This document shows, piece by piece, positions 36,201 through 62,825 of a DNA stretch of 64,000 nt. The notes beneath the pieces are model-generated. The model did no database searches. It saw nothing but the letters and a program-made list of their open reading frames with translations, and was not told the DNA's origin. A program made the position numbers and the translations under genes. How positions within the stretch are numbered: the first letter of the stretch is position 1; every line of letters starts with the position of its first letter. Source of the stretch: Macrostomum lignano. Its lineage: Eukaryota. The stretch is taken from NCBI GenBank assembly GCA_002269645.1, contig NIVC01001300.1, positions 186,001 to 250,000 on the forward strand, written 5' to 3'.

Positions 36201-39200
36201 ACAGAATCCCACGGCGAGCCGATTGGCAGTTCTCCGAGCGGCGCGCTGGTCCGCGAGCCCGCTTTCTTCTCCTGACAGACAGAACAACTCTGGCAGTGTT
36301 GCACGATGTCTTCAGCCATGCCGGGCCAGTAGGCAGTCAGTTTCAGTGTGCGGTAGCATTTCTCGGCTCCGAAATGACCTCCCAGACCTTCGTGAGTGTT
36401 GGTCAAGAACTGTTGTCGAAGCCGCGCTGGCACCACTGGAACCTCCCGCAGGCCGTCCGGGTCATTGAACTTGCGCAGTAGAACACCGTCATCATCCAGC
36501 TTCAGCTTCTTCCAGATTCTGCCGAGTTGCTGCAGTGGTCCTGCTCGCCATCTGGGTGCAATTTCTGCGTCCTTGTCCATCGCCTGAATCACCTGGCTGA
36601 GCTCCGAGTCATGTCGCTGCGCAGTTTTGAGCTCTTCAGTGTCGATTTCCGGAGTCAGCTGCGTAGCTGCGACTTCTTGGCCGTGCAGTCTGGACAGCGC
36701 GTCAGCATCTGTGTTCTCAACGCCTCTTCGGTACTTGACGGTGAAGTCAAACTCTTGAAGCAGCAGACGCCATCGTTCTAGCCTGCCGTAGCTGTCAACT
36801 CTCTGTGAATCGATGTAGGTGAGCGGGCAGTGATCCGTGTGCACCGTGAAATGCTTGCCGAGAAGATAGTGGCGAAAAACTTTGAATGCGTGCAAGATGG
36901 CCAGGCACTCCTTTTCTGTTGCAGAGTATTTCTTCTCAGCTGAATTGAATGCGCGGCTTGAGAACTCGATGACCGCCTCGCCTTGCTTCAGAACTGCACC
37001 GACTCCGCTGCCACTGGCATCCGTGAAGACTGAGAACTCCTTAGTGAAATCCGGGTTCACCAGGATCGGAGGACTAATTAGGCACCTTTTGAGCTCGTCG
37101 AAGGCCGTCTGGCATTCCGAAGTCCAGTCAAATGGGACGCCCTTGCCAGTCAGATGGTGCAGCGGTGCGGCGATGGCAGCGAAGTTGGCTACATGGCGTC
37201 AGTATTGGTTGCACAGGCCGATAAACTGACGCACCTCCTTGGCTGACCTCGGCTCTCTCCACTGCTGAATTGCCTCCAGCTTCTCCTGGCTGGGCTGGAC
37301 ACCATCCTTTGAATACCGTGTGCCGAGAAAGGTCACTTCGGGTACCGCGATCTTGCACTTGGAGCCTCTTAATGTCAGTCCGGCTGCTCGAAGTCGCTCG
37401 AAGGTCTCTCGAAGTTGCCGCAGATGATCCGACTTGGTCTTTGAGAAGCAGAGGCTGTCATCGAAGAACGTGAAGACGAAATCGCAGCCGTTGAAAACTT
37501 TTGACATTAGCATGCAGAATGTGCTTGGGCCCCCCGACAGACCTTGGGGCATTCTCTTAAATTGGTACAGCGGCATCCCTGGTCCCGGACAGAAAGCAGT
37601 TTTTAGCTTGTCTTCTTCTGCCATCGGAATTTGAAAATAGCCTCCGTCGTCGGTAGTCGGCAACTCGAACTCTTCACAGCTGAACTCGGGGACGAGTGCG
37701 TCTTCGATGTCAACTGGATCGTCGGTGTCAGCCTGGAATCTGGTGCTGCAGACTTGGCCGGCTTCTTGTGAAGATCCTGTGAAGTCCAGTTGCAAATTAT
37801 GCTTGCCGATGAAGTCGACTCCAACAATGACAGGGCAGACCAAACTTGACACAACGAAAAACAATTGCCGGGCTGTCACTCCACCGACTGTAAGTGGCAA
37901 TTCGATTTGCCGTTCTATGCTAATTGGCTGCTTGTTCACTGAATGAAGTTGCACTCTGGCTGCAGTTGCCTGTCTGAGCTGGGATTTTGTTAGGATGCTG
38001 GACTCAACTAGTGAGCACTGGCTTCCGGTGTCTAACAGCGCCTTCACACTTCTGCCATCAAGCTTGCACTCACACTGCGATAGTCGGTCGGGCGCGACGC
38101 TGCATCCGTCGAAGATCCCGCCGACTGTGAGCGCCGGCCTTGAAGCCGCTGCTGCTGGGCCCGCAGTTACTGCTGGCCGGGGTTGCGGGCCCGCACACCC
38201 CAGCCTCTGGCGTTTCCCGGCTGTCGCCTGCTGTAGCAATCTCTGGCAATGTGGCCGGCCTTGTGGCAGTTGTAGCAGATGATGTCAGACTTCGAACGGT
38301 GCTGAGGTCTCGTTGTGCTGCTCGTCCTCACTCCACAGGCTGCCAGCTGCTGCAGCTGGGAACTCAGGGTGCTCACCGATGCCTGCAGACTCTGCACAGT
38401 GTCCCGCAGCTCCTGAACTTCGCTGGATTGGCTCGACTGAGGTTGCACCGCTGCTGCTGGGATACTTGGCGAGCTGTGCTGCATCAGTAGCTGGGCCTTT
38501 TGAAGAGCTTGCTCTGAGGTCTTAACGCTGGAGTCCGCGCGAATCTGCCAGCTCACGGATTCGGGAAGGCCACAGACGAACTGATGGAACAGCAGAGCCT
38601 CTTGAGCATCTTTGTTGTCCACGGAGGAGCTTTTGAGCATCTTCTTTAACTCGTAAAGATACATGCGTGGAGTCTCATTTGACAAAATCTTCCTTGATTT
38701 GAACGCCTCCATGACGGCGAAGTGCTCGCGGTTCGGGTGGAATGCATCATCCAATGCCTGGACTACTTTGTCGTAGTCTGCCTGATCTCCTGCCGACAGT
38801 TCCAAATAAACGACGAGAGCCTCGCCATCCAAAAATGTGGCCAGTCGCTCCGCTTTGCACGTGTCCCACTTGTTGACTTTTGCGCATACATTGAAACGCT
38901 GCAGCCATTCCTTAAAGTTGCCGGTACTGAAAACTCTGGGCAGCACTGCACTGGCGGTCAAACCTTTCTCAGCCATTCTAGAATAATTTGCTCTGCTACC
39001 AGTTGTAGACTAAGGCAGAGAGATACAACTGAGAGTTGACGAAGCCTCTTGGCGTTTATTAGATCGATACGCAGGTTAAATACGATACAACGATTGTTAC
39101 ATAACTGGGTATAAAAGATAGAGACAGGGGTGGGTGAAAAGCACGTACATGCTGTACAATAGCAACCCCCACCCCGCTCTAGCGACTGGCGCATACAAGT

Positions 39201-40832
39201 ACACTTGCAGCTCGCTGCAAAGTCAGTATTTGTTTCAATCTTTTCAGATCGATCACTCTGGCCGTCTGTCCGCCCAGTTACTGCACGGCAACGGCTCCCT
39301 CATCGCAGCGCTGACGTCCTCAGACTCGGTGGCCACCGGCAGCTTCGTCTCCGTGAAGATCTCCGTGTCTATATCGGGTCGCTCGCTGTCGCTGTCAGTG
39401 TCATCTTCAGTCAGTTCTGCATCGCTGAGCAGTGCGAGTCCGCTGCCGCAGCTGTCAGGCCAGCTCATCATCGGCGGCTTCAGTGGCGCATCACCGCCAA
39501 GCACCGGCGGCAGATCAAAGCGATCTCTGCCTGTTTTTCCAGCCAGCATCTGGGCTGCGATGCCTTCAGGCGTGACTGGATTTCGGGGAATAATTTCCCA
39601 TCCGAGATTGAATGAGGCTAGGCCACTGATTTTGAGTTCTTCCCCATTTTACCTTGCTCTGTCAGGAGCAGTGGCAGCCAGTGAGTCTTCAGGTGTCGTC
39701 TTGAGCTCGTCGCTTGATATTTGTGAGGTATATTTGCCATGCAGAAACGGAGGAACGTGCACGTCGTCAAAGGCTTCGTGAGTATTTTTTGCTAATTATG
39801 GCATTATTAAATAATACTTAGGTTTGAATGCAATCAGACTTTTTTTCAGTTGCGTGTGCCACCCCGGCTATTCTGGAACGGACTGCTCAGTTGACAACTC
39901 AGAATGCAGCCCGAATCCGTGCGGTAGCGACGAAGTGTGTTTAGAGAGAAGCCACTCAGCAAATTATAACCATGAAACTCTTCCGTGGCCATTTAACGGG
40001 TCATTCAAGTACAAAACAGCTGATGGGTATCTGTGTTTGAAATCGCATGGTAGGTTTCGCACTAAGTTTATCCTGCGTACAGTTTTTAAGACGATTCATT
40101 TTATCTTAAGCCCGCACATCGTATTTTAGCTTCATCAGAATGTTCAACTGGTTTTGTCGGCTCAATTGGTTTCTATTCAATCTTGGTTGTGGTCAGTGTA
40201 ACACTGTCTTCGGCTTTTACGTGTGGCATTGTTATTTTCATTGTTCGATATCGATCGGTAAGTTGTAGTGGCATGTATGTTTATTGATTGGTATGAATTA
40301 CGGGTGTAGGTCTACGAGCTACATAGTTTGAGTAACAATCCTGAGTTTTTTTGTTAAAATTTTAGAGGAGTCAGTTGCAGGGTAAAGGTTCCTTCACAAG
40401 CAGTGCGCCATCTCCGCCACAAGAAGATTTTGTTCAGGTAAGCTTCTTTTTCTTAGTAGTGCTTTGTTATGATCGTTTAGTACTGTTCTGTTTATTATTA
40501 AATTTGTATTCTATGATTCGTTAATTCCTAGGGTAAATGCACGCCGGAACCTGACACAGAGGACGAAACTCCTTACACCTTTGCTGATTATGACCGCATT
40601 CGGATGCATGTAAGATATTTCCCTTTGAACGATAAGGCGGTTCTGCTGCATTGCTAAAAATATCACTTGGATATGAATTCTAATTGCACTGCAGCAGCTC
40701 AGTGTTGGAGGTCAGCCGACCGAAGCGGCAGAATCGCCTTATGCTGGTGTATATGAAACGTCGACCGATGACCACACCTACGATAATTTGAGTAACAATT
40801 CAGCCAAGTTCAGTTCATTCCAACTCGCGTGA
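24271..40832 (+). CDS. Gene C: Crumbs-like ectodomain (about 17 EGF, 2 LamG-like, truncated terminal EGF) + TM + about 95-aa Tyr-rich tail
   Basis: Phase-consistent exons 24271-24364, 26239-26526, 27449-27641, 28249-28476, 29836-30180, 33045-33484, 33563-34848, 39248-39777, 39850-40049, 40130-40257 (TM), 40366-40437, 40532-40609, 40695-40832 (ends HTYDNLSNNSAKFSSFQLA*). Requires splicing across the LTR element. Confidence 0.82.
24530..25710. repeat. 21-bp minisatellite (aaaatgagtgcccttgttgct) in intron 1 of gene C
   Basis: Highly homogeneous tandem array; source of the AKMSALV ORF. Confidence 0.97.
26889..27185. repeat. Degenerate GAPTSET-type 21-bp array in intron 2 of gene C
   Basis: Same unit and position as in A and B. 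Confidence 0.9.
27655..27960 (-). mobile_element. 5'-truncated LINE 3' end
   Basis: Similar to 52620-52880 plus 54372-54500 ([30 protein letters not shown]; shared end ccccctgcagct-agt-aag). Confidence 0.8.
28728..28805 (+). pseudogene. Orphan half-copy of an EGF exon (CSVDTDYCLSGPCQNGGVCSDGNST)
   Basis: Near-identical to the 3' part of exon 28249-28476; no in-phase acceptor seen. Confidence 0.7.
30922..30975 (+). mobile_element. hAT-like MITE terminus
   Basis: caggggtcggcaacct...gcggcccgcg resembles hAT/Charlie-type ends; partner end not identified. Confidence 0.4.
31091..32679. repeat. Identical 86-bp direct repeats (31091-31176, 32594-32679) flanking 1417 bp
   Basis: Base-for-base match; the interior has three tandem 28-29-bp units at about 31268-31350. 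Confidence 0.85.
35264..38239 (-). pseudogene. pol: Retrotransposon Pol, disrupted
   Basis: Protease LDTGS; RT lacks its N-terminal part (ELPTTD joined to GYFQI); FFDD; TGA at 37199-37201 where Arg is expected; RNase H DASG; integrase HHCC and D,D,E region intact. Confidence 0.88.
38167..38976 (-). CDS. gag: Retrotransposon Gag, 269 aa
   Basis: Starts just after the PBS; CCHC knuckle CYNCHKAGHIARDC. Confidence 0.88.
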   Translation of the reverse strand: MAEKGLTASAVLPRVFSTGNFKEWLQRFNVCAKVNKWDTCKAERLATFLDGEALVVYLELSAGDQADYDKVVQALDDAFHPNREHFAVMEAFKSRKILSNETPRMYLYELKKMLKSSSVDNKDAQEALLFHQFVCGLPESVSWQIRADSSVKTSEQALQKAQLLMQHSSPSIPAAAVQPQSSQSSEVQELRDTVQSLQASVSTLSSQLQQLAACGVRTSSTTRPQHRSKSDIICYNCHKAGHIARDCYSRRQPGNARGWGVRARNPGQQ

Positions 40833-43089
40833 AAAAATACCGTGTGATATATGAAACAAACCAACATCTGATAATCTCTTAGTTTTTGTTTAAAACAAAT
40901 TTTTCATGCAATCATATGGTTTTAATTCTATAGCGGGGCAGCCGATTGACTCTTGCGACACAACGCCACAGCTAGTTCGGTTCCATGCGCAGTTTATTTA
41001 TATGTGCTGGTGCTTTGTCATCCGATTCATATACCCATGAGAGTGGCTTTACACCCTGTGTGAGCGTGTGAGCGAGTGCGTGCTTGCGTAAAGTATTGGC
41101 GCGCTTGTACATGAATGTGCTCAGGAGTCAGCGGAGTGGGTAGAATTGCCTCAACACTTGCTGTGGGATGATGTCTGCAAACATATATTTTTTTACGTTA
41201 CGGATACAAAGCACTGCATCTCACACTACACTCGGAATTATGAATCCGCTCGCGAGAAAAGTTATTCGTCTTTTTTAAAGCTCTAATCAAGAACTGTTGT
41301 TAAAGCTATATTTTGAATATTTCAACGTTGCGAACCAAAAAAATCGTATTGATCAGCGGCTGCTCTAACCGTATCAATGTTTTTAATCTAGATTGTTTAA
41401 TCTATTTTTTTACTTTTCCGCTTTTTACCTTTTAACTCAATGTATTCAAATATTATTCCCGATAAGTTTTTTGTATTTAAGCTTTTACTCTAGAAATCAA
41501 CAAAAGGTCAATTATTTTGACGTATTGATTGGTACATTAAGAGTAGTATCATTAATACGTTTGTGTGTGCTTTTTAATTGATCAATGCTCATTAGTTGGA
41601 TCAATGCTGATCTGTTTACATTTTTATAAATTTTTATATATTTTTGATGTACTGATCGTCCTAGCGAGATCAATCAAGATCGTCCTTCTTTATTGCCCGC
41701 AGAAATGCTGGTTTAAAAAATAAAAAAAGAATTAAGGACACCACCAATATTCAAGGGTAAACCCATCGCGTTTTGATACAAGCTCTCATCTTCAAGGCTT
41801 ACACGTCACCACGCATCAGAACAGTATATTTTTTTAATTAGTCGAAAACTGCACTGGGCAGTTGAAAGTTCGGTTTCAGTCTATCCGTTAAATGTACATT
41901 ACAATTTTCGGCGATGAAAACAGAGTAGACGACCTACTACAACATTTTAAGTATACTGATTTATTTTGGAAATCGCTCAATTGTCAAATCTTATGGGGAT
42001 GTTGCCGAAATGCTTGACTCATTGGGGTTGCCGATTTGCTTTCAACCAACGCTCATGAGGATCTGATATCTTAGGCTAGCTGGCTTTCAGGACGGGAGGT
42101 TGTTTGCTTTAAAAATCATCAATGTAGTTTATTCAACGTTGTGGCGGCCAGACTGTACGCGACCGGCAGCACCAGTGCAGCCGCACTGGAAACCCCCCAA
42201 CCTCTGTCTAGCTGAGGTGGGGTGGTTGCGCACCGCACTAGCCGGCTCGCTAAGCCAGGGGGTTGGCGTAGCCAATCACGCCACGCCACCTTTTTCGCAC
42301 CTCCCTTGGCTTGGCCCCTCAATCTGGCGTTGTTTGTAAATATATAAATACACGCGCAAAGCAGCACAAACTCTTCGCTGCCATTCCATCTATTGAAACA
42401 AAAAGACCTTCCGCCTCAACGTTTCATTTCTTTCTTTGATTGCAAGTTAAACATACTGATTTGCTGTTTGGTGTGGTGTAAGCCCTGACGATAACCGTTT
42501 TTGTCAAAGCGCATCGGCTTTTAACTTTAAATGCTATTGAGGCACTGAAGGTTGATGCCCTTCATTATTTTTTTCTTCAGTTGTGAAAGAGCTTGTTCTC
42601 TTAAATATATATTTTTAGCATAGGTACCCTACTGTATTTGTTCAATTTTGTTATGATACGGACAGTTCAAGAGTCAGACTATTTTTGTTAGCATAATGAT
42701 CGATAGGTGAGAGTAAATTCTTAGTAAGTTTAATAAAATTACATCGATTTTTGCGTATTTTTACATTTCAGCTAAGAACCGATTAAAATGACGACCTTCT
42801 TTACGACCTTCTGGATACTGGCGAATGTAGAAGAATTTTCTTGCAAAAAGCATTTGCATCAAATATGTGGTTAAATGGACATTGGCTAAATGGAAAATTT
42901 GGGTTTCAAATTATTTATTTGAAATCATTTATTTTCACAAGTTTTTAATTAGCAGTTTAATTAGCAGGGATATAATTAGAATCAGTATGTCCGATCACTT
43001 TGTAAAGGTGTCTTGAGGAATACGGAGGGGCTTGGCAGGGTACATATATTTTAGAAGAAATCATGGGTATGTGGAAGGCACAGAGATAT

Positions 43090-43330
43090 GAGGAGGACAA
43101 ATAAGGTATGGGGAAGGCACATGGGGTATGGGGAGGGCATATGGGGTGTGGGGAATTCACATTGGGTATGGGGAGGGCACATGGAGTATGGGGAGGGCAT
43201 ATGGTGTGTGGGGAATTCACATTGGGTATGGGGAGGGCACATGGAGTATATGGAGGGCATAGGGGTATGGGGAAGGGAAATGGGGTATGGGGAGGGCACA
43301 TGGGGTTTAGGAAGGGCACATGGATACATT
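43090..43330. repeat. G-rich degenerate tandem repeat (gggtatggggagggcacat)
   Basis: Repeated G-run units with a longer super-period. Confidence 0.8.
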
Positions 43331-45273
43331 ACGGGGTATAACACTAAGCAAAGGTGTTACTTTTAAAGTAAATAACCATTGGGAGGGCGAATATAGACGT
43401 TCTGATAAAAGTTAATGCATACCTTTTTGTTTTGCTGAAATTTTGAGCTTGTGAAAGTTTCGGCGTTGTAAAACATGCTAATTTATTTTAGACGATGTAA
43501 TTAATTGTAGGCCGATACGAGCGTATCTTGTAAGTTTAAGCCCTTTATTCATTTGACACAAACTTTTGTTTTGCCATCTCATTTGTTCTCGCTTATTGAT
43601 TGGTTTTAAGTATTCCATTTTCATGCTTTCAAGTAAAGGAATGCTCAAGCAATAGTTTAATTTTCTTTCATGTGGCAGACAGCTCAAACTTTCTATTCAA
43701 AATGACACAGTAGGTCCGTCCATAATTGAACTTCATTATTGATTTACGAGTACAAAGAAGCTAAATGCCAATTCCTAGTCAAACACAGGAGTTCACTGTC
43801 TGTATTTTCAGAAATCATAAAACAGATTCTCACACCTGGAGGTATCCTTTTTTAATCTTCCAATTTCGTTTAGTATCGTCAAACCTTTTTAGAGAGCCAA
43901 AAGAAGACAACAGAGGGTCTGTTTGACTGGTTTCTTGCAAAGATGAAACTTTCTTGTGTATTGTCACTTGTTTGGTGATAGAAAATTCAGCTCAAGGATG
44001 GTACTCAGTTCACACATGTTTGTTGAATAATAAGCAGACTGTCATTATCGGTATTTGCTGTGTTGCCTGGATGACTGAGTCAGTGGTGACGTTTTACGTA
44101 TAGGTAATGCTTCTTTTCGATTCGATCTGGTGTTTAATGAAGGCGATAATCTTAGGGGAATCTTAGGGGAGCTGATGTTAGGCGTCAAGCGGTATTCATC
44201 CTACGGATGAGCGAGGAGAGATAGAGGATGGATAGAGGGAAAATAAGAGTGATTCCTGCTTAACTAAATACTTCAATTAATATTGTCGAATATCAAAAAA
44301 TCAGATTGGTGAAAAGTGTTCTGGGTGGAAACCGGGTTACTTCCTTGACTATATAATTTTATTTTTCTTCTAATCTTCTAATTTTTTTTCTCTAATTTGC
44401 AGATCCGTATTCAATCTTTCTCAAGACAGCAAGTAGCCTGTCGGCGTGAGAATGCGTTACCCAGTGACTATTTTTAGCAGAATAGGTAAACATCTTCATT
44501 AAAAAACTAGACAAGACACGCGTGTTTTTCAGGGGGAGGGACAGAGGGTCGTAGCAAGTTAACAATCTGAGACGCGATTCGCTCAAATATTCTCAGCGTC
44601 CGCCCCCTCTACAGCCTAGTTGTCTGTGCAAATGCCGCACCGTCTTTACCCCCCGTCTTTTGTTTTATCATTGTTGATGCTAAGATTGAGCTCAGGGTAA
44701 AAAACATAATTGCGCTCAACGCCCAATACATTTTTTCTAGCTTTTCTCGAGCAGCGCAGTATATATGATACTACTATAGCGTGTACGCGAGTACATTTAG
44801 TACAATGACGTACATTAACATTTCTATCGTAATGATACATGTACGTTTTTAGAGCTCGTATCCTTGCAGTTTAACTCAGACAAACTTGTTTCCCTGTTAG
44901 TGAGATTATTTTTGTATTTTTGTTTCGACATGTTTGGCAGGAAAGTTAGGTTGCAATGTATATAAATATTCACAAGAATTGTCTAAGTACATAATAAAAT
45001 TATTACTGGATTTGCTGCATATTGACCAGTGGATTTAGCTCCCTATACTTAAAAAACCATAAGCAACTTTGCGTGAAGTCTCTTCAGAACAGCAAAGTAA
45101 GTAAAAAACGTCCACGCTACGTGGTTTAAAAACCATTGCCTGAAATATTTTAGTGGATATTATAATATATTTATTATTATATGAATCATTCTCTAAAGTC
45201 ACCAAAGTTTAATATGAGAAACAAAAACATGTCCCTGTTCTATCAGACAGATCGAGTTTTCGATATTGGCGCT

Positions 45274-48200
45274 ATGAGGCAACTTCTACCAGCGAACAAT
45301 CAAGAGTTTTTTTGTCTGTTGTTGATCATAACAGCGGCTTCTGTTGTTGGGCAACATGCTGGTTAGTACAAAGCTAGTCTATCTAGATTTAATCTGTGTA
45401 AATTTTAGGTCGTAAGCTTCGAATTGGAGACATTGAATAGCCGAAGTTTATGCCTTTTTATCTATTTAGATTCGGAACCGAGTACAACGCCCTGCGGCAG
45501 TTTCGAGTGCATCAATGGTGAAGTCTGCAACGATACTGGTAACGACTCGTTCTGTTCCTGCCCATGGCCTTACTCTGGGGACGCGTGCAACATCACTGAT
45601 GACCACACTGAAGTGTTGCCTGTGATGGGTATCAATTCTCGTAATTGCTTTTTTAACTCTAGCTTACATAGGTCAATGATTAATTACGCAAAGTATTATT
45701 CAGTAGAAATGCTTTGCTACGTGGTTAAATAATACTATTTTATATATTAGTTCCAACAAAGTTAAAAAATTTAAATTTCTAGACGGACAAAGTTTAAAAG
45801 ATGTAGCTATCGCAGTTGGAATTGTCGGATTACTGGGCTGGATTATCTTAATCACACTTGTCGTTCTATTCGTCGTGCTGCTTAAAAAGGTACCACTGTA
45901 ATATTGGTTTGCAGAATATACAGTCCCGTAAATAAAAATCTTACCCAAGATACGGCTAACCAATATGAAAACCTTTAGGGCAAACTAATATGTCGGCAGT
46001 CTGTTGTCGAACGAAACAAAAGGCCAGATAGTACCGAGTTGGCTCTGAATGATGGACATCATTATATTGACGCGACTGCGTATTTAAACGCAGGAATTAA
46101 TACCGGCGATGAAGAATTGGGTGACATGAGCGGCACTAATGCGAGCTCCGTTGTTGTTGCTGAGCAGCAAATCGAATCGGTTCATGTAAGTTATTTTTAT
46201 CTTTGTTTTATTTTTGTCTCGAAGATGCTTGCAGATTATATCGGGTTCATATATCTAACTGTGGTAATTGACTCTACCCTAAAAGTGCGTCTTACTGGGT
46301 GTGTTCAACTCCGATCTGTGATAGTGCCCATGCGTGTATCACCTCTGAAATAAGTAGCTACGGATTAATTTTGACATTAAAATATTTTTTTAAAAAGCAA
46401 GTTTAACTATCAATTAATGTATATTTTGATTCTATAAACTAGGAACTTATCTTGACTTAGCTGCAGGACAGCTCCAAGTGGGACACAGCGGAAAGGCCCG
46501 GGCGCCCATTCCGGAAGGATAGAGTGTTGGCGCCGTCCAGGGAGGTCCCCCAGTTTCGCATGATCTGGTTTATATCTTCGAGTTTGCTCGATTCGGTAAT
46601 TGGTGTGTTTAGCCCGAGGTAAGTGAGTCTGGCCTGCATGACAGCGGAAGATATTAATTCGCGAACAAAAAATTTACATTATTTTTTACTGAACAAAGAC
46701 TGAAAACTCACTCATGCCCTTACAGCAGCAGGATTAGAACACCTGTTACACACTGCTTGCGCTGTAGTCTTTCAGAAAGGCTGCTTTAAACCTCACTGTG
46801 ACAGTTTTTTTGGAAAAAAAAGTGAAATGTTAGTCAATGTCAATGCCTATTGCTTTAAATAATTGGCTTAGGACATTGTCTGCAAGTTACGAGTAGGTAA
46901 AGCTGGTTGCGTTTCATGCAGATAAAAAACAGACTTCTAAGTGTTATCCTCGGGAAAGAAGTTTGAGATTTTATAGTGATACCTGTGTGTTACTGTTCAG
47001 GAGACACCTGTCCGAAATGAAGTTCAAGAAACACTTCATGCATCCGATGATCTGTCTGGTGAAGTGTACATTGTTCCGGATGACATAGACCAATCTACTG
47101 AGCAGCATGAGCAGCAAGCGACAGCAGATGACAAAGAAGACAATAAATCAAAAAAGCGATCCAAAGAGGAAAATCCTAAATCGAGCGCTAAAATGAGCTT
47201 AATAAGCAAGACCAGCTCCAAGCTACGCAAGCTATTGAAGACAACCCCAGCTGCAGCCGGTCAGTCAGCCTCTCAGGCTGGCACTTCTGGCCTCAAAAAT
47301 ACGGTTGAGGAAGCTGATCCGAATGCAACTGGAGAAGATCAGGTAAATTCTGCATTTGTTTTTAAGGCTCTAGGGAAATAGCTGTTTATAGCCATCCTAA
47401 GCGGGTTTAATGAACATCCAGTTATAAATGTTTGATATTCTCATGTACATCAGACTTGATTGACTGTTAAAGCTTCTGAACCTCGTATGAACTATTCGAC
47501 TCTTGGGCTGAACAAATCTTTTAAATATATTTTTAGGAGTATGAGCGTATCATATATAGTTTTAGAGTCCATGGTTCTACTATAGCTGTGTCTTCATCAA
47601 AAGAATCACTCACCTATCAATACTCAACGCTTGAATTTTAATCTCCGCTTTTCTCTACACTTGGTCAATTAATTTAAAAAAAACTGCAGGAAGAAAACCA
47701 AGCAGCGGATTTTGGCGGCAACTCAGGTGATGATTTCTACTGCGCACCGGATGCAAATCAGACACCGGATTCAGACCTAGTTGCCGATGGTGGTGAATCA
47801 GCTGATGACGTTTACGTTGCACCGGATGCACACCAGACTCCGGAACCAGTTGCAGAGCAGCAGCTGTCAGAAAACACAACTGCTTCTAACGTAAGTAGAA
47901 AAATAATGATGTCGATTTTTTCTCGTTCAGCAAATTTTTTTCGTCTCATACCCTGTGGGACAACTAAGTGGGGCGTACAGTGGGTGGTAGTCGGTAAATA
48001 TTCTTATTTCCGCTTTACAATGAATTATGATTAGATTTTTTCAATGAAAAATTGTGATTTTGTACTTCATAAAATTCAATTTTTATGAAGTACAGTTTGA
48101 AGTTGAGTTTCATAAAATTCAAGTTCGCATCAGACTACTTTTAGTACCGTAGAGCTGAGAGCCCCCCCTCGAGAAAAACTTTTTTTACGCTTTTAGAAAA

Positions 48201-49802
48201 ATGATTAAAAAACATCAAATTGACGATAAATATTTCATATTTGCGCTTATAGAAATTGTTTTTGTCTTGCTTTGCCATCTATATCGTCAGTAAAATCCAT
48301 AATACCATTGAGAAACTTGCGTCATTTACAATAAAATTCGTTTTAACAGCTGAAAAGAAATCAAAATATCAGCCCAATAGATCTAGCTTTGATTTAATTT
48401 TCAAAATAGAACAAATTCTAACAAATTAGTGATTAATTACAATCGTTTCTTGAACTCACTTCTGCAGCCCGTTGAGTTGGACGAATTCTACGCCTGTCCG
48501 GACAATCCGCTTGACCAGTCATCGAGTCAGGCAACTCAGCCACCGGATCAGCCCCCATCTAAGCCGCCAACCAGTGGTGGTTCAAAGCCAAAACCGAACC
48601 CGAAGCCGAGGCACCTGCAGAAACCGCAGAAGCAGCAGCAGCGGCAGCAGTCAAGCGTGCCGCCCCCTCTTCCAGAGCGGCACGCAATGAGAACTCAGAA
48701 TCAGCTGTTGGTAAGATCTTAATTATGTTAGAAATGAAGTTAAGGACAAGTCAATATGGTAACTTTAGTAGCTTTCAATCGTCTCGATTTTTTATTTTTA
48801 CCTGTATTTACATTTTATCATAATACGAAGTGAAAATTTGTGCAAAAGGTTCATGGGTAATGTCTACTGCTTTTATAAACCAGTGGTATCTAGTGTCCGA
48901 CTGAGATGAGAGCAGGATTTGTTCGTGTAAAACAGGAGTCGACAAACATTTTTATCTTAGGGCCAGATAGGAGGATAAGAGAGAGGAGAGGAGATAAGAG
49001 AGAGTAAAGAGGAGAGAGGAGAGAGGAGAGAGGAGAGAGGAGAGGAGAGGGGAGACTGGAGAGCGGAAAGAGGAGAGGAGGGGAGAGAGGAGAGAGTAGA
49101 GAGGAGAGTATAGATGATAGGCGAGAAGAGAGAAGAGAGGATAGGTGAGAGGAGAGAGGAGAGAGAAGAGAATTGATGAAATGCGAGAAGAAAGGAAAGA
49201 GAATAGGAGAGGATAGAAGGGGCCACATGTGTGTGGCCCGCGGGCCGGATTTTGCCGAGCCCTGCAGTATAACATCCAAAGTCACAAATTCTCATAGCTA
49301 TTGTTCACACCGCCATCAAATAAGCCATCAAATCGCGTGACTGATGTTCAAAGTGCCGATTTACAATTTTGACAATTTTGAATATTTGCTACTTTTGCTA
49401 CGCGCTTATGCCAACGTTTACAGTTTTTGTTGCGCAGTTTTGCCAGCCCAGAGCCAGATGCTGATGCAGTCATTATTCAGGGCCCGATAACGCACTGACC
49501 ATATAGAAAATTTCTTCGGGCTTTTGATGATCCCGCAACTTCCGGTTTACAACCAGCAGTATGGGAGTTTATTATATAATCAGATTATTTCTACACAGGT
49601 ATCGTACATACATATAATAATTGTATTTTTTCAGACCGCTGAAGAGTCAGCCGCTAATCTGGAAGACCCCGGAAATGTCTATGATGAGCTCGATAATCAC
49701 CCGACCAGTTTGCCGGATTCTTCTGGTGGACAGCAGCAACCGCAAGCAGCAAAAATAGATTTACCGGCCAGAGTCGATTCAAGTAAAATCGCTCGTTTCT
49801 AA
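45274..49802 (+). CDS. Gene E: single-EGF type I membrane protein with about 386-aa Tyr/Pro-rich tail
   Basis: Exons 45274-45361 (signal), 45470-45628 (EGF), 45783-45889 (TM VAIAVGIVGLLGWIILITLVVLFVVLL), 45979-46185, 47001-47342, 47690-47890, 48468-48710, 49635-49802; phases consistent; last two exons resemble those of gene F. Confidence 0.8.
46455..46660 (-). mobile_element. Short LINE 3' fragment
   Basis: PAVMQARLTYLG resembles [12 protein letters not shown] of the other LINE copies; ends cagctaagtcaag. Confidence 0.55.
48933..49264. mobile_element. hAT-like MITE with GA-rich (agagg) interior
   Basis: Imperfect TIR CAGGAGTCGACAAA / CAGGGCTCGGCAAA and subterminal ggcccgcgggcc; no clear TSD. 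Confidence 0.5.
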
Positions 49803-51689
49803 AAAAACTGCTAAAAATTTCGACTATTTCAAATATTTAATATCACACTGTAATACAATATAATTTATGATATCGGTACGCTTGTGCGAGCTACAATATA
49901 ATAGTTTCGTTGTTTTAACACGATTAATTCCGTATTTACCTATATGTGACGCATATCCAGTGAGTGGAATATTATTTTTTAAGCAGTTTTTGCCAGGGCT
50001 TGGTGCTCTAATATTCAATTTTTTTATTTTGCTTCTTAAGCACATTAATTTTCACCGAACGTTATCTAATAACTAGTTTGTTCGGATTTGATTAAATCTT
50101 TTAGGTCAAACATTACTTTCTCTTCTTAAAGTTCAATTATTATTCATTTTGCGCTTTTTATTAGCTAGCAAGCATCTCATTTTGTGCTATTTATGCTACG
50201 TTATTTTCTGCAAGCAAGTTTCACTCAGTTATATTTAAATGTAACAAAGATAAGTACGTGGGGTCCTGATGCAATAATTGCTTTTTTGTGAAATTCAAAG
50301 CAATTTCTATGTTCGAGCGTCTGGAATCCAGCGTATTTTATTAGTTGATCATCGTTTTTTTCTGAGTATTCATGTAATATAGAGTAGAACTCATTTCCTG
50401 TACTATTCTTGCGCCTTTTTAAACCTGAGGAAATCTAAGCTTTCATTATGTCATTAAGAATTAGCGGCTTCTAAAATCGTTTTTTCTATAAATTACTTGT
50501 TTCGAATTCCTCTTGACGTTCAAGCGCTGTTTTTGAGCGTGAACCTGTACAGCGCTTTGGCACGAAGGCACAGGAGTGCGACAATCAGTTCCTTTAATTA
50601 CGACATTCTGGCACAGTGTTGCTTGTTCGTAATGCATGAATGGCGTTGAGGCTGTTGAAGACGTGCTCCAGCTTGGCTTTTCAGCAAGAAATTTTCTGTT
50701 GAAATCTGAACTCATCTAGCAAATTAATTTTAAGGTTAAGTGAGCTAAATTTAGCTAATTTTAAATAGCTAAATGATTTAAAACACAGATTTAAGATAAT
50801 TGTAAACAAGTGTTTGCGCCCCGGATGATACATGAAATTGTTTGAGAGGCTGTTTTTGCTATCTTTAAAGTCCGTACGAAAGCATAAAAATGTTTTTTTT
50901 CTACGCATAATGAGTGTCTCTGCTACGGTGCAGTGTTGTTGGCGTCTCAATAAAACATGGAATATGAAATCACAACGCGTTTATTCAAATTGTTTATAGT
51001 CTTCAGTTTGAAACTTTTTGTTAGTAAAAGACGTAGATGTTTGTATAGTATCTGCAGTATTGATTTGTAAAATATTCCTTTTTGATTGCAAGAATCTAAT
51101 ATCGGTATTATATATTGTTTCTTCAGCTTACATGAAATTACGTGGCTTTCGGTCGGCTATATGATTATATACTCACAACTTGTTACTTCGTGACAGAGAA
51201 GATGATTAAAAGTCAAAATCAAAAGATGGAGTTGTCTCCTCCGAAGACACGGCCATGTCTCATATATTATGAAACAAAGGAATTTATCTCAGTGAATACA
51301 TTAACCAGGAATGACTGCTGCTGTGAGTTTTAATATAAAAACAATAATTTGTTTCACTATTAATACGAATTTTACTTGTTTTGGGCTACAGTTTGTTTTA
51401 ATTGTTTGTTTTTCTTATCAAATAGTGATACAAAGTAAAAAGTGAAACTAATAAGTTATTTAATTATTTCTTTTTAGTACTTTCTCAGTTCCTGTGTGCA
51501 CTTTTTAATCCACTGATGCCTTCTGTCTACTACACGTATCTCACAGTTGAGCATCAAGCAGATCTGTCGCCACGGATTTTATGGTTTGGCGAGGGGCGGG
51601 GGGCAAAGCGAAATTCCCGAACAAATAAGTCCTAAATTGTTTAGGAAATTGGTATTTTGCTAGTACTGATTTCTCGGCGTCGTAGGCAC

Positions 51690-52195
51690 TCATTTTAGCG
51701 CCGCAGACACTCATCTTGGCGCCGCAGACACTCATCTTGGTACCGCAGACACTCATCTTGGTACCGCAGACACTCATCTTGGTACCGCAGACACTCATCT
51801 TGGTACCGCAGACACTCATCTTGGCACTGCAGACACTCATCTTGGCACCGCAGATACTCATCTTGGCACCGCAGACACTCATCTTGGCACCGCAGACACT
51901 CATCTTGGCACCGCAGACACTCATGTTGGCACCGCAGATACTCATCTTGGCACCGCAGACACTCATCTTGGTACTGCAGACACTCATCTTGGTACCGCAG
52001 ACACTCATCTTGGTACCGCAGACACTCATCTTGGTACCGCAGACACTCATCTTGGCACCGCAGACACTCATCTTGGCACCGCAGACACTCATCTTGGTAC
52101 CACAGACACTCATCTTGGCACCGCAGACACTCATCTTGGCACCGCAGACACTCATCTTGGCACCGCAGACACTCATCTTGGCACCGCAGACACTC
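51690..52195. repeat. 21-bp minisatellite (ggcaccgcagacactcatctt)
   Basis: Tandem array; its reverse complement resembles the variant units ending the 24530-25710 array. Confidence 0.96.
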
Positions 52196-55681: not shown

Positions 55682-58600
55682 ATGTCTTCACGACACCAGA
55701 GCTACCTGTCAAATCTATCAGCAATCGTAATTGGCTTCAGTTATTGCTTCTGCCTGCTTTCGGCTGCTGGATCGGCAAAGGATACGATACAGCAGCTTGA
55801 TCCTGATGGTATGCATAGATGGTATCCATTTATCGAAATAAACTCAGTTTAGCTCATTTTTTATTTACTGAGTAAAATTCGTTTGTTTATCTTTTAAGTA
55901 GTAAGTAGCATTTTTGCAGCTGCAATCGCCTCATTAAATACCCAGGAGTCGATGACTTTTCCTTGCTAAATCGACAGCGCAGGGAAACCTGCGATTCTTT
56001 GGAATGCGTCAACGGTGGCATCTGCAACAGCAGCGAGCCGGTTTGCTCCTGCCCGAAGCCCTACTCAGGAGACAATTGCAGCGTCACAGATGACTACTGC
56101 AGCAAGCTGCAACCGGATATGGGTATCGACTCGTTGCCAGTCTGTTTGAACGGCGGATTATGCAGTCCCATAGAGACAGAGCCTTTCTTTAATTGCAGCT
56201 GCAGCATCAACTACACAGGTAAAAACTTCATTTTCATCCGTTGCAGTAATTTTTTAAGCAACGCACACACACACACACACACAAGATCACACATTGATGT
56301 TGAAAACTTTCCAGGCAATCGATGCGAACTATTTGAGGCCTGCTCCATTCGGAAACCGTGCAGCAATGGACTTTGTGTTGGAACAAGTAGCGGCAAAAAC
56401 TGCAGCTGCTTTGCAGGATGGACTGGCGCTTCTTGTGCTACAAATGTCAATGACTGCCAAACTGGGCTGTGCAAGAATGGAGGCGAATGCATTGATGGAA
56501 ACTCAACGTGAGTCAAATTCCAGGTCATTTGGTACGTACGGGGGCGTAGCGGTCTAGCGCGGCGCTCTGCTGCGCCAGCGACCCAGGCTCGATTCCAAGT
56601 GCAGCCAAATTAATTCGGGGCTAAATTGGAATCTCGGCTTGGCTCTGCTCGTGTAATTAGTGGTCTTGAGAGCCAATAAATTTATCGTTTTATAAAGGCC
56701 CTGTGTGAGTGCGTCTGTGTGCGTGTTCCTGCTCAGGGGAGTTGACGGAATGGGCAGTAATGCCTCTTGCCGGTTGCGTGACGATGTCACTTAAAGTGCG
56801 ATAGGGTGCCACAGCCTCTGCCTCTAATGAACGAATAATCTGGTTATTTGGTCCGAAAAGTAAGGCAGTTTGTTCAATTCATCGTTTTCCATATTTTTTC
56901 AATGCTCATAATGCATAGAAACTGCATACTGAACAATCACTGTTCTCACATTGTTAAACTGACAAGAGCAACTCTAATTTTCCTGTAATTTATTTCTAAT
57001 TAAACTATAGGTACACCTGCAACTGCTCCAAAACGGACTTCTCTGGTCCCAACTGCACTAATCCGATTAACGACTGCCAGCCGAATCCCTGCGTGAACAA
57101 CGGCACCTGCGTTGACGGCCTGAGAAATTTCACCTGTCAATGCCTGGCAGGCTTCTCCGGCAGAAACTGCTCCATCGATCATCCCGACTGCATTCCCAAC
57201 CCGTGCCCCGCGAATTCAGCCTGCCTCGAGCGAAGCAATCGAAGTCTGTACGGCATTCCGTCTCTGCCAGCTCCGTTCAATGGCCAGTTTCGGTACTCCC
57301 TGGCGGCTGGATACGTGTGCGACAAGGGCTACGGCAGCGGTGAGTGCTGGGTACCGCTGCTAAAACAAGCAGAGGCGGATTCAGAAATATAAACTGGGGG
57401 AGGCGGATTTTAACCAAAAGAGTGGGGGGGGGCGCCATAATATACACTAGAGAGACGCTATAATTTACACTAGAGGGGCGCCATAGTATACAGTAGAGAG
57501 GCGCCATAATATTCACTAGAGTGGCGCAAAAATGTACACTAAAGTGGCGCCATAATATACAATAGAGTGGCGCCATAATATACACTAGAGAGGCGCCATA
57601 ATATACACTAGAGTGGCGCCATACTATACACTAGAGTGACGCCATAATAAAAACACTAGAAGGGCGCCATACTATACACTAGAGGGGCTCCGTAATATAC
57701 ACTAGAGGGGCGCCATAATATACACTAGAAGGGCGCCATTTTCTACACTAGAAGGGCGCCATACTATACACTAGAGGGCGCCATAATATACACTAGAAGG
57801 GCGCCATACTGTACACTAGAGGGGCTCCGTAATATACACTAGAGGGCGCCATAATATACACTAGAGTGGCCCCATAATACACACTAGAGAGGCGCCATAA
57901 TATACAAATGAGGGGCGCCATACTATTCACTAGAGTGGCGCCATACTATACTCTAGAGGGGCGCCATACTATACAATAGAGTGGCGCCATAATGTACACT
58001 AGAGTGGCGCCATAATGTACACTAGAGTGGCGCCATACTGAGAAAACGGGGGGCAATGAGGACCTTTTTTAGTTCAAAGGAAATGGGACCCCATCATTGC
58101 CAGCCATAAGGGGGCGTCGCCCCCCCCCCCTGAAATCCACCACTGCCACCAAGGGGCAGACTGTGAATGCCTGACAATTAGAAAATCAGGGCCGCTGCAC
58201 ACCTCTGTGAGCATATGAGAATATAAGCTACTCGATACTTTTTTATAACAGGCTAACACTGAAATGCCTATGCTACATGATAGAAGTATTTTTATGATGA
58301 AGTTCTTGCTTTTTACATATGGTCAGAAAATACTGTTTTAAAACAAATGTAAGGCTATGAGCGTAATGTACTTGCGCAATAAGTTATTAATTGTTTTGTC
58401 GCTAAATGAATATAATGACTAAAGATTGTCTTTGTGTAAACAGCCAAGACTCATATTGAGAAATAACTCACGAGGTCTGAGTTGGGCCAGTTGCTCAAGG
58501 TAAATATGAAGAACGTTTTTTTCACCTCTTGGCCATAGAAAGGTCCAGAAGGCGGCCCTCAGCCCATCGTTTCCTTATACCACTCCCTTCTCTCTCTTGT

Positions 58601-61600: not shown

Positions 61601-62825
61601 TTGAGATTGCGACTGTGAGTGTCTCAGTTGTGTCTGTGTGAGTGTCTCAGTTTGTGTCTGTGTGAGTGTCTCAGTCAGTTTGTGTCTATGTGAGTGTCTC
61701 AGTTTGTGTCTATGTGTGAGTGTCTCAGTTTGTGTCTGTGTGAGTGTCTCAGTTTGTGTCTATGTGTGTGTGTCTCAGTTTGTGTCCGTGTGAGTGTCTC
61801 AGTTTGTGTCTATGTGTGAGTGTCTCAGTTTGTGTCTATGTGTGTGTGTCTCAGTTTGTGTCCGTGTGAGTGTCTCAGTTTGTGTCTATGTGAGTGTCTC
61901 AGTTTGTGTCTATGTGTGAGTGTCTCAGTTTGTGTCTGTGTGAGTGTCTCAGTTTCTGTCCGTGTGAGTGTGTCTCAGTTTCTGTCTGTGTGAGTGTCTC
62001 AGTTTGTGTCTGTGTGAGTGTGTCTCAGTTTCTGTCTGTGTGAGTGTCTCAGTTTGTGTCTGTGTGAGTGTCTCAGTTTGTGTCTGTGTGAGTGTCTCAG
62101 TTTGTGTCTATGTGTGTGTGTCTCAGTTTGTGTCCGTGTGAGTGTCTCAGTTTGTGTCTATGTGTGTGTGTCTCAGTTTGTGTCCGTGTGAGTGTCTCAG
62201 TTTGTGTCTATGTGTGAGTGTCTCAGTTTGTGTCTATGTGTGTGTGTCTCAGTTTGTGTCTGTGTGAGTGTCTCAGTTTGTTTTTGTCTGTGTGAGTGTC
62301 CCAGTTTGTGTCTGAGTGTGTGTCCCAGTCTGTGTCCGTGTGAGTGTCTCAGTTTGTGTCTTCAAGTATTTTGTGTATTTGAATATGGCCTAAGCTGATT
62401 GCGTACCGACTTTCTATTACGCAATTCTCAGAAAAAGCCGCCAGCAAAGCCGCCAAAGCCGGGGTCGAAGAAAAAGCAGCAACAACAACCGCCGGCTTTG
62501 CCAATTCGAAACAAAAAACCACTGCAGACTACTGTAAGTATTTAAGTTATGAACTTACTATTATATATTTATATAATCAGTTTAATGCACGTTAATCCTA
62601 CAGAAAAGTGTATTTATCAATTTTCATAGTAAGGCGTTTTCACAATTCTTTGAATTCCAGTCGCCTGGCACAAGTGAAGAGTCGGAGACTGTATATGACA
62701 CCATTGAGAATGACAGCTCAGTACCAGCCCAACAGCCGCAGCCGCTGGGACAGCAGCAACAAACCAACGCTGCATTGCCTACCAAGATTGATGTGAACAG
62801 TTTCGCAAAACTTGAAAAATTTTAA
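55682..62825 (+). CDS. Gene F: 5 EGF + truncated Crumbs-type EGF + TM + about 307-aa Tyr/Pro-rich tail
   Basis: Exons 55682-55808 (signal), 55946-56218, 56315-56507, 57011-57339, 59256-59368 (TM), 59468-59521, 60076-60279, 60998-61045, 61141-61227, about 61310-61573, 62432-62533, 62661-62825 (ends AKLEKF*); phases consistent; the 193-bp exon matches exon 3 of A, B and C in length. Confidence 0.8.
56540..56606 (+). mobile_element. tRNA-like head, probably SINE-derived
   Basis: A-box-like tagcggtctagcgc and B-box-like ggctcgattcc at tRNA-like spacing; acceptor stem poor. Confidence 0.35.
57370..58145. mobile_element. MITE-like element containing a 23-24-bp minisatellite (ggcgccataatatacactagag)
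   Basis: Array at about 57430-58040 is clear; imperfect TIR CAGAGGCGGATTCAG / CAGTGGTGGATTTCAG; TSD not seen. Confidence 0.6.
59625..59985. repeat. 15-bp minisatellite (ggcgcccctggtgct / aaagcccctggtgct)
   Basis: Tandem array in a tail intron of gene F. Confidence 0.95.
61610..62360. repeat. GT-rich 22-26-bp minisatellite (gtgtgagtgtctcagtttgtgtct)
   Basis: Tandem array in a tail intron of gene F. Confidence 0.95.

What the first reader, a model, noticed from the sequence alone, without database searches (positions are those of the whole stretch)
45979..49802. Gene E tail carries repeated acidic YxxP motifs plus a PxxPxR site
Seen: EVYIVPDD, DFYCAPD, DVYVAPD, EFYACPD, plus HYIDA, AYLNA, NVYDEL and PPPLPER, spread roughly one or two per phase-0 exon. 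Established: pYxxP binds Crk/Nck/Abl-type SH2 domains, tandem YxxP arrays form the p130Cas substrate region, and PxxPxR is a class II SH3 ligand. Inference: a membrane-anchored scaffold resembling LAT/Cas in logic, unexpected on a Crumbs-related protein.
Basis: partly seen in the sequence, partly recalled or inferred. Interest (0 to 1): 0.7.

Follow-up and report, generated by a model that had tools for sequence, protein, structure and literature searches.

The report
Flatworm orphan membrane protein, tyrosine-motif tail
A small membrane protein found only in the flatworm Macrostomum lignano has a long floppy intracellular tail with four copies of a tyrosine-proline motif that looks like a docking site for signalling proteins, but nothing yet shows that the motifs are used.

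Summary
The window comes from Macrostomum lignano (Mlig_3_7, contig NIVC01001300.1). Exons 45979-49802 are the cytoplasmic tail of gene BOX15_Mlig022268g3. The RNA-seq-derived GenBank model matches my exon joins 100%. Four sit in [DE]-[VF]-Y-x-x-P-D (0 of 200,000 composition-preserving shuffles reach this), and PPPLPER is present.

- Gene E is not a Crumbs-type protein. It is a separate 504-aa gene: signal peptide, one Notch-type EGF module, a TM helix and an acidic tail predicted to be disordered. It lies next to an EGF/LamG cluster.
- The motifs match Abl/Src acceptor sites, Crk/Nck/Abl-type SH2 sites (YxxP), a Grb2-type site (YLNA) and a class II SH3 site. A PAG/LAT- or Cas-like transmembrane adaptor is the best mechanistic reading.
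- The evidence is motif-level only. An exhaustive search of 1.84 billion representatives found no homologue outside M. lignano. Conservation could not be tested, because the three genomic copies are near-identical. Where they differ (exons 4-5), dN/dS is 0.4-1.0.

I class it as a new member of a known kind, of modest interest.

The parts
42740..42902 (+). Probable 5' non-coding exon of Gene E. The start is approximate; the donor is TGG|gt at 42902/42903.
   Evidence: The model of copy g1 (P0003) reads through this exon into ...TDRVFDIGAMRQLL; window sequence. In copy L002 the start ATG sits at the end of this exon (ATG|gtaaga). In the window that donor reads GA, so the first in-frame ATG is at 45274.
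45247..45361 (+). Exon with the start codon (ATG 45274-45276) and signal peptide MRQLLPANNQEFFCLLLIITAASVVGQHA.
   Evidence: matches the full-length paralogue P0004.
45470..45628 (+). Exon encoding the single EGF module, with cysteine spacing C-x4-C-x5-C-x8-C-x-C-x8-C, a YSGDAC ending and three N-x-S/T sites. An alternative in-frame donor lies after 45640, the position used in the paralogues.
   Evidence: Pfam EGF is only weak (E=0.21). 49% identical to the first EGF of the downstream gene at 55990-56136. About 1% divergence between copies against 8-12% in the flanking intron.
45783..45889 (+). Transmembrane exon (VAIAVGIVGLLGWIILITLVVLFVVLL followed by KK).
   Evidence: AlphaFold2 models a helix over residues 2-38 of P0001; pLDDT is 87-97 for the first ~30 residues.
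45979..46185 (+). Tail exon 4: juxtamembrane GKLICRQS (single Cys, 45991-45993), HYIDA (46060-46074) and AYLNA (46078-46092, a YxN Grb2-type site).
47001..47342 (+). Tail exon 5: YxxP unit 1, EVYIVPDD (47061-47084), and a basic stretch KSKKRSK...SKLRKLLK (47145-47240).
47690..47890 (+). Tail exon 6: tandem YxxP units 2 and 3, GGNSGDDFYCAPDANQTPD and GGESADDVYVAPDAHQTPE (cores 47732-47752 and 47807-47827).
48468..48710 (+). Tail exon 7: YxxP unit 4, EFYACPD (48483-48503); a Pro/Lys/Gln-rich stretch; and the class II SH3-type site PPPLPER (48660-48680).
49635..49802 (+). Last exon: NVYDEL (49674-49691; YDEL fits either a Nck-type SH2 site or a YxxL sorting site). C-terminus ...SSKIARF, stop at 49800-49802.

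Best explanation
Gene E (BOX15_Mlig022268g3) is a stand-alone gene restricted to Macrostomum lignano. It encodes a 504-aa type I membrane protein: signal peptide, one glycosylatable Notch-type EGF module, one TM helix and a 388-aa acidic (net charge -30) tail predicted to be disordered. The tail is a string of short linear motifs. My inferred mechanism is that it acts as a transmembrane adaptor. Cytoplasmic tyrosine kinases of the Abl/Src type phosphorylate the four [DE]-[VF]-Y-x-x-P-D sites, whose hydrophobic -1 residue, +3 Pro and upstream acids fit their substrate preference. The pYxxP sites then recruit Crk-, Nck-, Abl- or RasGAP-type SH2 domains. pYLNA recruits a Grb2/Drk-type SH2, and PPPLPER holds an SH3 protein (a Src-family kinase or an adaptor), which would allow processive phosphorylation. 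In logic this is a PAG/LAT-like anchor carrying a miniature Cas-like substrate domain. Shown here: gene structure, splicing, topology signals, motif presence and their non-random enrichment. Inferred only: phosphorylation, the binding partners and any biological role.
For: The exon model is confirmed by the RNA-derived annotation. A signal peptide, an EGF module with N-glycosylation sites, a TM helix and a following KK put the tail in the cytoplasm. All 7 Tyr lie in motif-like contexts, and four copies of [DE][VF]Y..PD were never reached in 200,000 shuffles. The core is retained while the flanks diverged between units. The tail is predicted to be disordered: mean hydropathy 0.382 is below the charge-hydropathy boundary of 0.441, 60% of residues are disorder-promoting, and AlphaFold2 gives pLDDT below 50 beyond the TM helix (single sequence, so weak evidence). 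The YxxP specificity of the Crk SH2 domain predates Metazoa, and transmembrane proteins with cytosolic YxxP repeats are already described in choanoflagellates (PMC5043372). A flatworm kinome (Schistosoma mansoni) contains 2 Abl, 6 Src, 2 Syk, Csk and Fak kinases (PMC3135232). PAG has a similar layout: a 16-aa ectodomain and a long cytoplasmic region (the abstract breaks off at 'a 397-'; PMC2213442). The Abl optimal substrate EAIYAAPFAKKK has the same Phi-Y-x-x-P core.
Against: There is no phosphorylation, binding or expression-pattern data. No homologue exists outside M. lignano, so conservation of the tyrosines is untested. Between the three genomic copies, tail exons 4-5 show dN/dS of 0.4-1.0 on 9-17 substitutions, and exon 4 diverges as much as its intron (6.3% vs 5.9%). 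The -2 acid and +4 Asp of motif 1 are lost in two copies (GGVYIVPND). Two of the four units are a tandem duplicate. There are only 4 YxxP sites, against 6-25 in Cas orthologues. I did not verify that M. lignano itself has Crk, Nck or Abl.
Confidence: 0.4

Rival explanations
1. Gene E is a young, weakly constrained orphan gene. A partial duplicate of a neighbour's signal-peptide and first-EGF exon acquired a low-complexity tail. The YxxPD units multiplied by internal duplication and have not yet decayed, and they have no dedicated binding partner.
For: No homologue in 1.84 billion representatives. dN/dS of 0.4-1.0 in tail exons 4-5, with exon 4 diverging as much as intron 4. Units 2 and 3 are clearly a tandem duplicate. 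All tail exons are phase 0, which makes duplication easy. The EGF is 49% identical to the first EGF of the downstream gene. Splice sites differ between copies.
Against: Units 1 and 4 share nothing with units 2 and 3 except the [DE]-Phi-Y-x-x-P-D core, and units 2 and 3 kept the core at 67% nt identity. That pattern is what motif-level selection produces. A 388-codon ORF is kept open across five exons and is transcribed and spliced. The dN/dS estimate rests on very few substitutions, and disordered tails typically evolve fast outside their motifs.
Confidence: 0.3
2. The motifs are functional but do not act through SH2 docking. They could be sorting or endocytosis signals (YDEL fits YxxL for AP-2) or a lineage-specific ligand bound without phosphorylation. 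The protein would then be a trafficking cargo, an adhesion molecule or a membrane-tethered EGF ligand rather than a signalling scaffold.
For: YDEL fits YxxPhi. Single-EGF type I proteins are the classic layout of membrane-tethered ligands. The basic KSKKRSK...SKLRKLLK stretch could bind acidic lipids.
Against: YxxP has Pro, not a bulky hydrophobic residue, at +3, so the four repeated units are not YxxPhi signals. There is no NPxY, dileucine, DPF or NPF motif (by inspection). The EGF cysteine spacing is Notch-type, not the C-x7-C-x4-5-C-x10-13-C-x-C-x8-C plus GxRC pattern of EGFR ligands. An acidic -2/-3, a hydrophobic -1 and a +3 Pro together are the tyrosine-kinase/SH2 signature.
Confidence: 0.15
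3. The tail belongs to a Crumbs-type polarity protein. The exons would be an alternative 3' end of the upstream EGF/LamG gene.
For: Same strand, and about 2 kb (5' non-coding exon) to 4.4 kb (start codon) downstream of an EGF/LamG gene that ends near 40830.
Against: Gene E has its own 5' exon, ATG and signal peptide, and the full-length paralogue model P0004 starts there. The upstream gene has its own TM exon and its own tail with a stop. Gene E has no LamG domain, no FERM-binding motif and no ERLI C-terminus.
Confidence: 0.03

Closest known systems
PAG/Cbp, LAT and other vertebrate transmembrane adaptor proteins (TRAPs)
   Same: Single-pass membrane protein with a very small ectodomain. The long tail has no folded domain and serves only as a string of tyrosine motifs plus a proline-rich SH3 site. 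PAG has a 16-aa ectodomain and a long cytoplasmic region (abstract cut at 'a 397-'; PMC2213442), against about 53 aa and 388 aa here. LAT also uses YxN sites (my own knowledge), as in AYLNA.
   Different: No sequence similarity: no Pfam LAT or PAG hit and no database hit. The ectodomain here is a folded, glycosylatable EGF module behind a cleavable signal peptide. There is a single juxtamembrane Cys instead of the CxxC palmitoylation motif. The dominant motif is YxxP rather than YxN or YxxV. TRAPs are vertebrate leukocyte proteins.
p130Cas/BCAR1 substrate domain
   Same: Repeated acidic-Phi-Y-x-x-P units in a disordered, proline-rich region, used as Src/Abl substrates and Crk/Nck SH2 docking sites (PMC5043372; PMC3983058, listed).
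   Different: Cas proteins are cytosolic, with an N-terminal SH3 domain, a Ser-rich domain and a FAT-like C-terminal domain. None of these is present. Cas orthologues have 6-25 YxxP units; Gene E has 4. In Cas the residue after the Pro is usually Pro (my own knowledge); here it is Asp.
Choanoflagellate transmembrane proteins with cytosolic YxxP repeats (S. rosetta PTSG_05573 and others; M. brevicollis A9V449, A9VAL3)
   Same: Single-pass membrane proteins with a cysteine-rich ectodomain and several YxxP motifs in the cytosolic region, proposed as Crk SH2 partners (PMC5043372). This is the closest precedent for the architecture.
   Different: No detectable homology. Three of those proteins also carry C-terminal SH2-like domains. 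Their motifs are YDVP-type.
Crumbs
   Same: Type I membrane protein with Notch-type EGF modules. Gene E sits beside EGF/LamG genes.
   Different: Crumbs has about 30 EGF and several LamG domains and a tail of about 37 aa with FERM- and PDZ-binding (ERLI) motifs (my own knowledge). Gene E has one EGF, no LamG, a 388-aa tail and ends in IARF.
Draper / CED-1 / MEGF10 / PEAR1
   Same: EGF-containing single-pass receptors whose tails signal through phosphotyrosine motifs (my own knowledge).
   Different: Those have many EGF repeats plus an EMI domain and use NPxY and YxxL/ITAM motifs with Shark/Syk or CED-6. Gene E has no NPxY and only one YxxL.

Membership tests
Crumbs | Large ectodomain with many EGF repeats interspersed with laminin-G domains | tested here: not met
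   Gene E has one EGF module and nothing else (gene model; Pfam; full-length paralogue P0004).
Crumbs | Short (about 37 aa) tail with a FERM-binding motif and a C-terminal ERLI PDZ ligand | tested here: not met
   The tail is 388 aa and the C-terminus is ...KIARF. The Crumbs tail features are from my own knowledge.
Cas (BCAR1/NEDD9/EFS) | [quoted passage not shown] | tested here: not met
   No Pfam domain other than a weak EGF at E<=1. AlphaFold2 shows no folded region in the tail.
Cas (BCAR1/NEDD9/EFS) | Array of YxxP motifs in a disordered substrate domain | tested here: met
   Four YxxP units, enriched over shuffles, in a predicted disordered region. Cas orthologues have 6-25 (PMC5043372).
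Transmembrane adaptor proteins (LAT/PAG/NTAL/LIME) | Short ectodomain, single TM helix, long domain-free cytoplasmic tail with multiple tyrosine motifs | tested here: met
   The ectodomain (about 53 aa with one EGF) is larger than in the classical members.
Transmembrane adaptor proteins (LAT/PAG/NTAL/LIME) | Juxtamembrane CxxC palmitoylation motif | tested here: not met
   Only one Cys (KKGKLIC) lies near the membrane. Whether it is palmitoylated cannot be tested here.
Transmembrane adaptor proteins (LAT/PAG/NTAL/LIME) | Sequence homology to a known member | tested here: not met
   No Pfam hit. No hit outside M. lignano in 1.84 billion representatives.
EGFR-ligand precursors (TGF-alpha/Spitz/neuregulin type) | EGF module with spacing C-x7-C-x4-5-C-x10-13-C-x-C-x8-C and GxRC | tested here: not met
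   The spacing is C-x4-C-x5-C-x8-C-x-C-x8-C and ends in YSGDAC, which is Notch-type. The ligand consensus is from my own knowledge.
SH2/SH3 ligand motifs (pYxxP Crk/Abl/Nck; pYxN Grb2; PxxPxR class II SH3) | Sequence match to the consensus in a cytoplasmic, accessible region | tested here: met
   YIVP, YCAP, YVAP, YACP, YLNA and PPLPER in the disordered cytoplasmic tail.
SH2/SH3 ligand motifs (pYxxP Crk/Abl/Nck; pYxN Grb2; PxxPxR class II SH3) | Tyrosines are phosphorylated and bind SH2 domains; the motifs are conserved in orthologues | not testable with these tools
   No orthologues are retrievable. No proteomic data were found.

The most novel reading that the evidence does not exclude
Gene E is a flatworm-specific transmembrane adaptor that arose recently beside an EGF/LamG gene cluster. 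It would have formed by capture of a signal-peptide and EGF exon plus amplification of a phase-0 YxxPD unit. That would be an independent, convergent invention of a Cas-like Crk/Abl docking array fused directly to an extracellular EGF module, and an invertebrate counterpart of the vertebrate LAT/PAG adaptors.
Probability: 0.25. Interest if true: 0.5.

Novelty: new member of a known kind. Interest (0 to 1): 0.3.

Why it matters
Dedicated transmembrane adaptors such as LAT and PAG are described almost only in vertebrate immune cells. A validated flatworm example would show how easily phosphotyrosine docking arrays arise on new membrane proteins. Macrostomum lignano is transgenic- and RNAi-tractable, so it would also offer a handle on Abl/Crk-type signalling there. 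As it stands, this is a motif-level prediction on a hypothetical protein restricted to one species. It corrects the idea that a Crumbs protein carries such a tail.

Tried and rejected
- **Homologue search with the whole protein** and exhaustive HMMER of the tail against 1.84 billion representatives: only M. lignano copies were found, so no cross-species conservation test was possible.
- **Using the three genomic copies (window, L002, L003) as a conservation test:**
  - Exons 6-8 and their introns are about 100% identical, so they carry no information.
  - Exons 4-5 give dN/dS of 0.4-1.0 on very few changes.
  - The frameshift in model g1 (P0003) is a 1-nt homopolymer indel, probably an assembly error.
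- **Pfam on the whole protein**: only a sub-threshold EGF hit, with no LAT, PAG or Cas domains.
- **Paralogue search for the tail inside the window** (tblastn): none found. Only the EGF module has relatives.
- **Expression data.** A full-text search for the gene id and the supplements of two M. lignano expression papers gave nothing.
- **Tyrosine sulfation** (acidic Tyr context): rejected on topology, because the tail is cytoplasmic.
- **EGFR-ligand reading of the single EGF:** rejected on cysteine spacing.
- **YxxPhi endocytic reading of the four repeated units:** rejected, because +3 is Pro.
- **Conserved island in intron 4 as an RNA gene:** no Rfam hit and no fold signal.
- L002 and L003 were not exposed to the Python sandbox, so I reached them through DNA alignment alignment files.
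Full report
**Where the window comes from.** A protein search with my reconstruction of Gene E returned only two hits, both from the free-living flatworm Macrostomum lignano. An exact look-up placed the best hit, P0001 (PAA69691.1, BOX15_Mlig022268g3, annotated as a hypothetical protein), on contig NIVC01001300.1 of assembly GCA_002269645.1 (Mlig_3_7). That locus is collinear with the window: L001 coordinate = window coordinate - 35805.

**Checking the observation.** Reading 45500-50300 and translating it shows five open exons on the + strand:

| Exon | Coordinates | Length (nt) |
|---|---|---|
| 4 | 45979-46185 | 207 |
| 5 | 47001-47342 | 342 |
| 6 | 47690-47890 | 201 |
| 7 | 48468-48710 | 243 |
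| 8 | 49635-49802 | 168 |

- All five have AG acceptors, and exons 4-7 have GT donors (exon 8 ends at the stop codon). All are phase 0.
- They follow a transmembrane exon (45783-45889).
- Their conceptual splice product is 100% identical to P0001 over all 414 residues.
- The GenBank annotation of Mlig_3_7 was derived from a genome-guided RNA-seq transcriptome (StringTie/TACO plus a de novo assembly; PMC5730564).

The cytoplasmic tail is 388 residues long and has only seven tyrosines, all within the listed motifs. Four of them share the extended pattern [DE]-[VF]-Y-x-x-P-D.

| Test | Result |
|---|---|
| 4 x Y..P in 200,000 shuffles of the tail | reached in 0.12% |
| 4 x Y..PD or the full pattern in the same shuffles | never reached |
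| Binomial estimate, 4 x Y..PD | about 1e-7 |
| Binomial estimate, full pattern | about 6e-14 |

The pattern is not a composition effect. Part of the repetition comes from duplication. The two units in exon 6 (GGNSGDDFYCAPDANQTPD and GGESADDVYVAPDAHQTPE) are a tandem duplicate, 67% identical in nucleotides and 54% in residues. Units 1 and 4 share only the core with them. A core kept while the flanks diverge is what a functional short linear motif looks like, but this is evidence from within a single protein only.

**What the gene is.**
- Upstream of the TM exon lies one EGF exon (45470-45628).
- Before that lies an exon with an ATG at 45274 and a typical signal peptide.
- A complete paralogue model, P0004 (PAA90325.1, 521 aa), has the same layout.
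- A 5' non-coding exon lies near 42740-42902.

Gene E is therefore a separate 504-aa type I membrane protein: signal peptide, one EGF module, a TM helix, and the tail.

- **EGF module.** The cysteine spacing is C-x4-C-x5-C-x8-C-x-C-x8-C, it ends in YSGDAC, and it has three N-x-S/T sites. This is the Notch/Crumbs type of module, not the EGFR-ligand type.
- **Pfam.** The only hit is a sub-threshold EGF match.
- **Neighbours.** The EGF module is 49% identical to the first EGF of the next gene downstream (55990-56136). The tail has no relative anywhere in the window.
- **Flanking genes.** They are tandem EGF/laminin-G paralogues, each with its own TM exon and short tail. The description as Crumbs-related applies to these neighbours, loosely, and not to Gene E. 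It has one EGF, no LamG domain, a 388-aa tail and a C-terminal IARF instead of ERLI.

**Nature of the tail.**
- It is acidic (net charge -30) and rich in S, A, D, P, Q and E.
- Its mean normalised hydropathy is 0.382, below the charge-hydropathy boundary of 0.441.
- A single-sequence AlphaFold2 model is confident only for the TM helix. It shows coil with pLDDT below 50 for essentially everything else. This is weak evidence, since no alignment was available.
- No folded domain is hidden in the tail.

**How it most likely works.** The four repeated units have a hydrophobic residue at -1, acidic residues at -2/-3 and Pro at +3.
- This matches the Abl substrate optimum (compare the standard peptide EAIYAAPFAKKK).
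- It also resembles the repeated YxxP units of the p130Cas substrate domain. Once phosphorylated, those units are the consensus ligand of the Crk SH2 domain and, from established specificity studies, of the Abl, Nck and RasGAP SH2 domains.
- The YxxP specificity of the Crk SH2 domain predates animals. Transmembrane proteins with cytosolic YxxP repeats have already been described in choanoflagellates (PMC5043372).
- AYLNA is a YxN (Grb2-type) site.
- NVYDEL fits either a Nck-type site or a YxxL sorting signal.
- PPPLPER is a good class II (xPPLPxR) SH3 ligand.
- Flatworms possess the kinases needed to phosphorylate such sites: Schistosoma mansoni has 2 Abl, 6 Src, 2 Syk, Csk and Fak kinases (PMC3135232).

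The best reading is a transmembrane adaptor, analogous to PAG (16-aa ectodomain and a long cytoplasmic region; the abstract breaks off at 'a 397-'; PMC2213442), carrying a small Cas-like array. All steps after the statement that the motifs are there and cytoplasmic are inference.

**What weakens it.**
- An exhaustive HMMER scan of 1.84 billion cluster representatives found nothing beyond M. lignano.
- The assembly carries at least three copies of the gene, which fits its known redundancy (PMC5730564).
  - From exon 6 to the end the copies are about 100% identical, introns included, so they carry no information.
  - In exons 4-5 they differ by 9-17 substitutions, with dN/dS of 0.4-1.0. Exon 4 is as divergent as intron 4 (6.3% vs 5.9%). 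The EGF exon, by contrast, is far better conserved than its flanking intron.
  - No tyrosine is changed. Two copies read GGVYIVPND where the window has GEVYIVPDD, so the acidic flanks of unit 1 are not fixed.
- This pattern is compatible with a fast-evolving disordered tail carrying a few constrained positions. It is equally compatible with a young, weakly constrained orphan gene.
- I found no expression or proteomic information.

**Verdict.**
- The mechanistic interpretation (a phosphotyrosine scaffold) is the most likely single reading, at about 0.4, and is unproven.
- The Crumbs framing is wrong.
- The architecture has clear precedents: TRAPs, the Cas substrate domain and the choanoflagellate YxxP membrane proteins. 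At best this is a new, lineage-restricted member of a known kind.
- Interest is modest at 0.3.

Noticed in passing
window 46456-46640 (intron 4 of Gene E): A GC-rich island stays about 99% identical among the three genomic copies, while the intron just upstream has diverged about 10% in L003. On the + strand, 46467-46595 is an open 43-codon, phase-0 segment with an AG acceptor and a GT donor, so it could be a cassette exon. The older UniProt model P0002 includes it; the RNA-based NCBI models skip it. There is no Rfam hit and no fold signal.
   Followed up: partly
window ~3900-13600, ~19950-23000, ~26200-40830: Three tandem EGF/laminin-G paralogues lie on the + strand. The same 21-bp minisatellite (GGGCGCCCACCTCAGAGACAG) sits in the equivalent intron of each, with very different copy numbers: about 125 at 4585-7210, about 18 at 20648-21017 and about 15 at 26890-27193.
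   Followed up: partly
window ~35000-39250, minus strand: A Ty3/gypsy-type LTR retrotransposon carries protease, RT, RNase H and integrase domains and has direct terminal repeats (the same ORF text appears at 35016 and 39122). It is inserted in the intron between two laminin-G exons of the third EGF/LamG paralogue. I searched it only piecewise and did not assemble it.
   Followed up: partly
window 13490-13612 and 40677-40829: The short cytoplasmic tails of the neighbouring EGF/LamG genes also carry tyrosine motifs of the YxN type (EYANE and IYANE; PYAGVYETS and TYDNL). They do not end in the Crumbs ERLI motif, so tyrosine-based tails may be a theme of the whole cluster.
   Followed up: no
window 45440-49850 versus L002 and L003: Divergence between the gene copies is mosaic. 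Exons 6-8 and their introns are about 100% identical, while introns 2-3 differ by 8-19% and exon 4 by 2-6%. This suggests gene conversion or partial assembly collapse. Two 1-nt homopolymer deletions in L003 create the apparent frameshift of model g1 (P0003).
   Followed up: partly
window 45775-45782 and 42876-42904: Splice sites differ between copies. The AG acceptor that the paralogues use for the TM exon reads AT in the window, so a nearby AG at 45781-45782 must be used instead. The ATG|GT donor that supplies the start codon in L002 reads ATG|GA in the window, so translation must start at 45274.
   Followed up: partly
window 48960-49220 (intron 7 of Gene E): A long GA-rich low-complexity tract (GAGAGGAGAG...) lies inside the intron and is identical in all three copies.
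   Followed up: no
window 322-1633, 8810-9879, 24538-25663, 43105-43323, 51687-52195, 57429-58037, 59627-59985, 61614-62361: There are many further minisatellites with periods of 15-60 bp and up to about 62 copies. This fits the reported 15% simple and tandem repeat content of this genome (PMC5730564).
   Followed up: no
window 55990-57200: Another multi-EGF gene starts downstream. Its first EGF ([30 protein letters not shown]) is the closest relative of Gene E's single EGF, at 49% identity. It is a plausible donor of Gene E's ectodomain exon.
   Followed up: no
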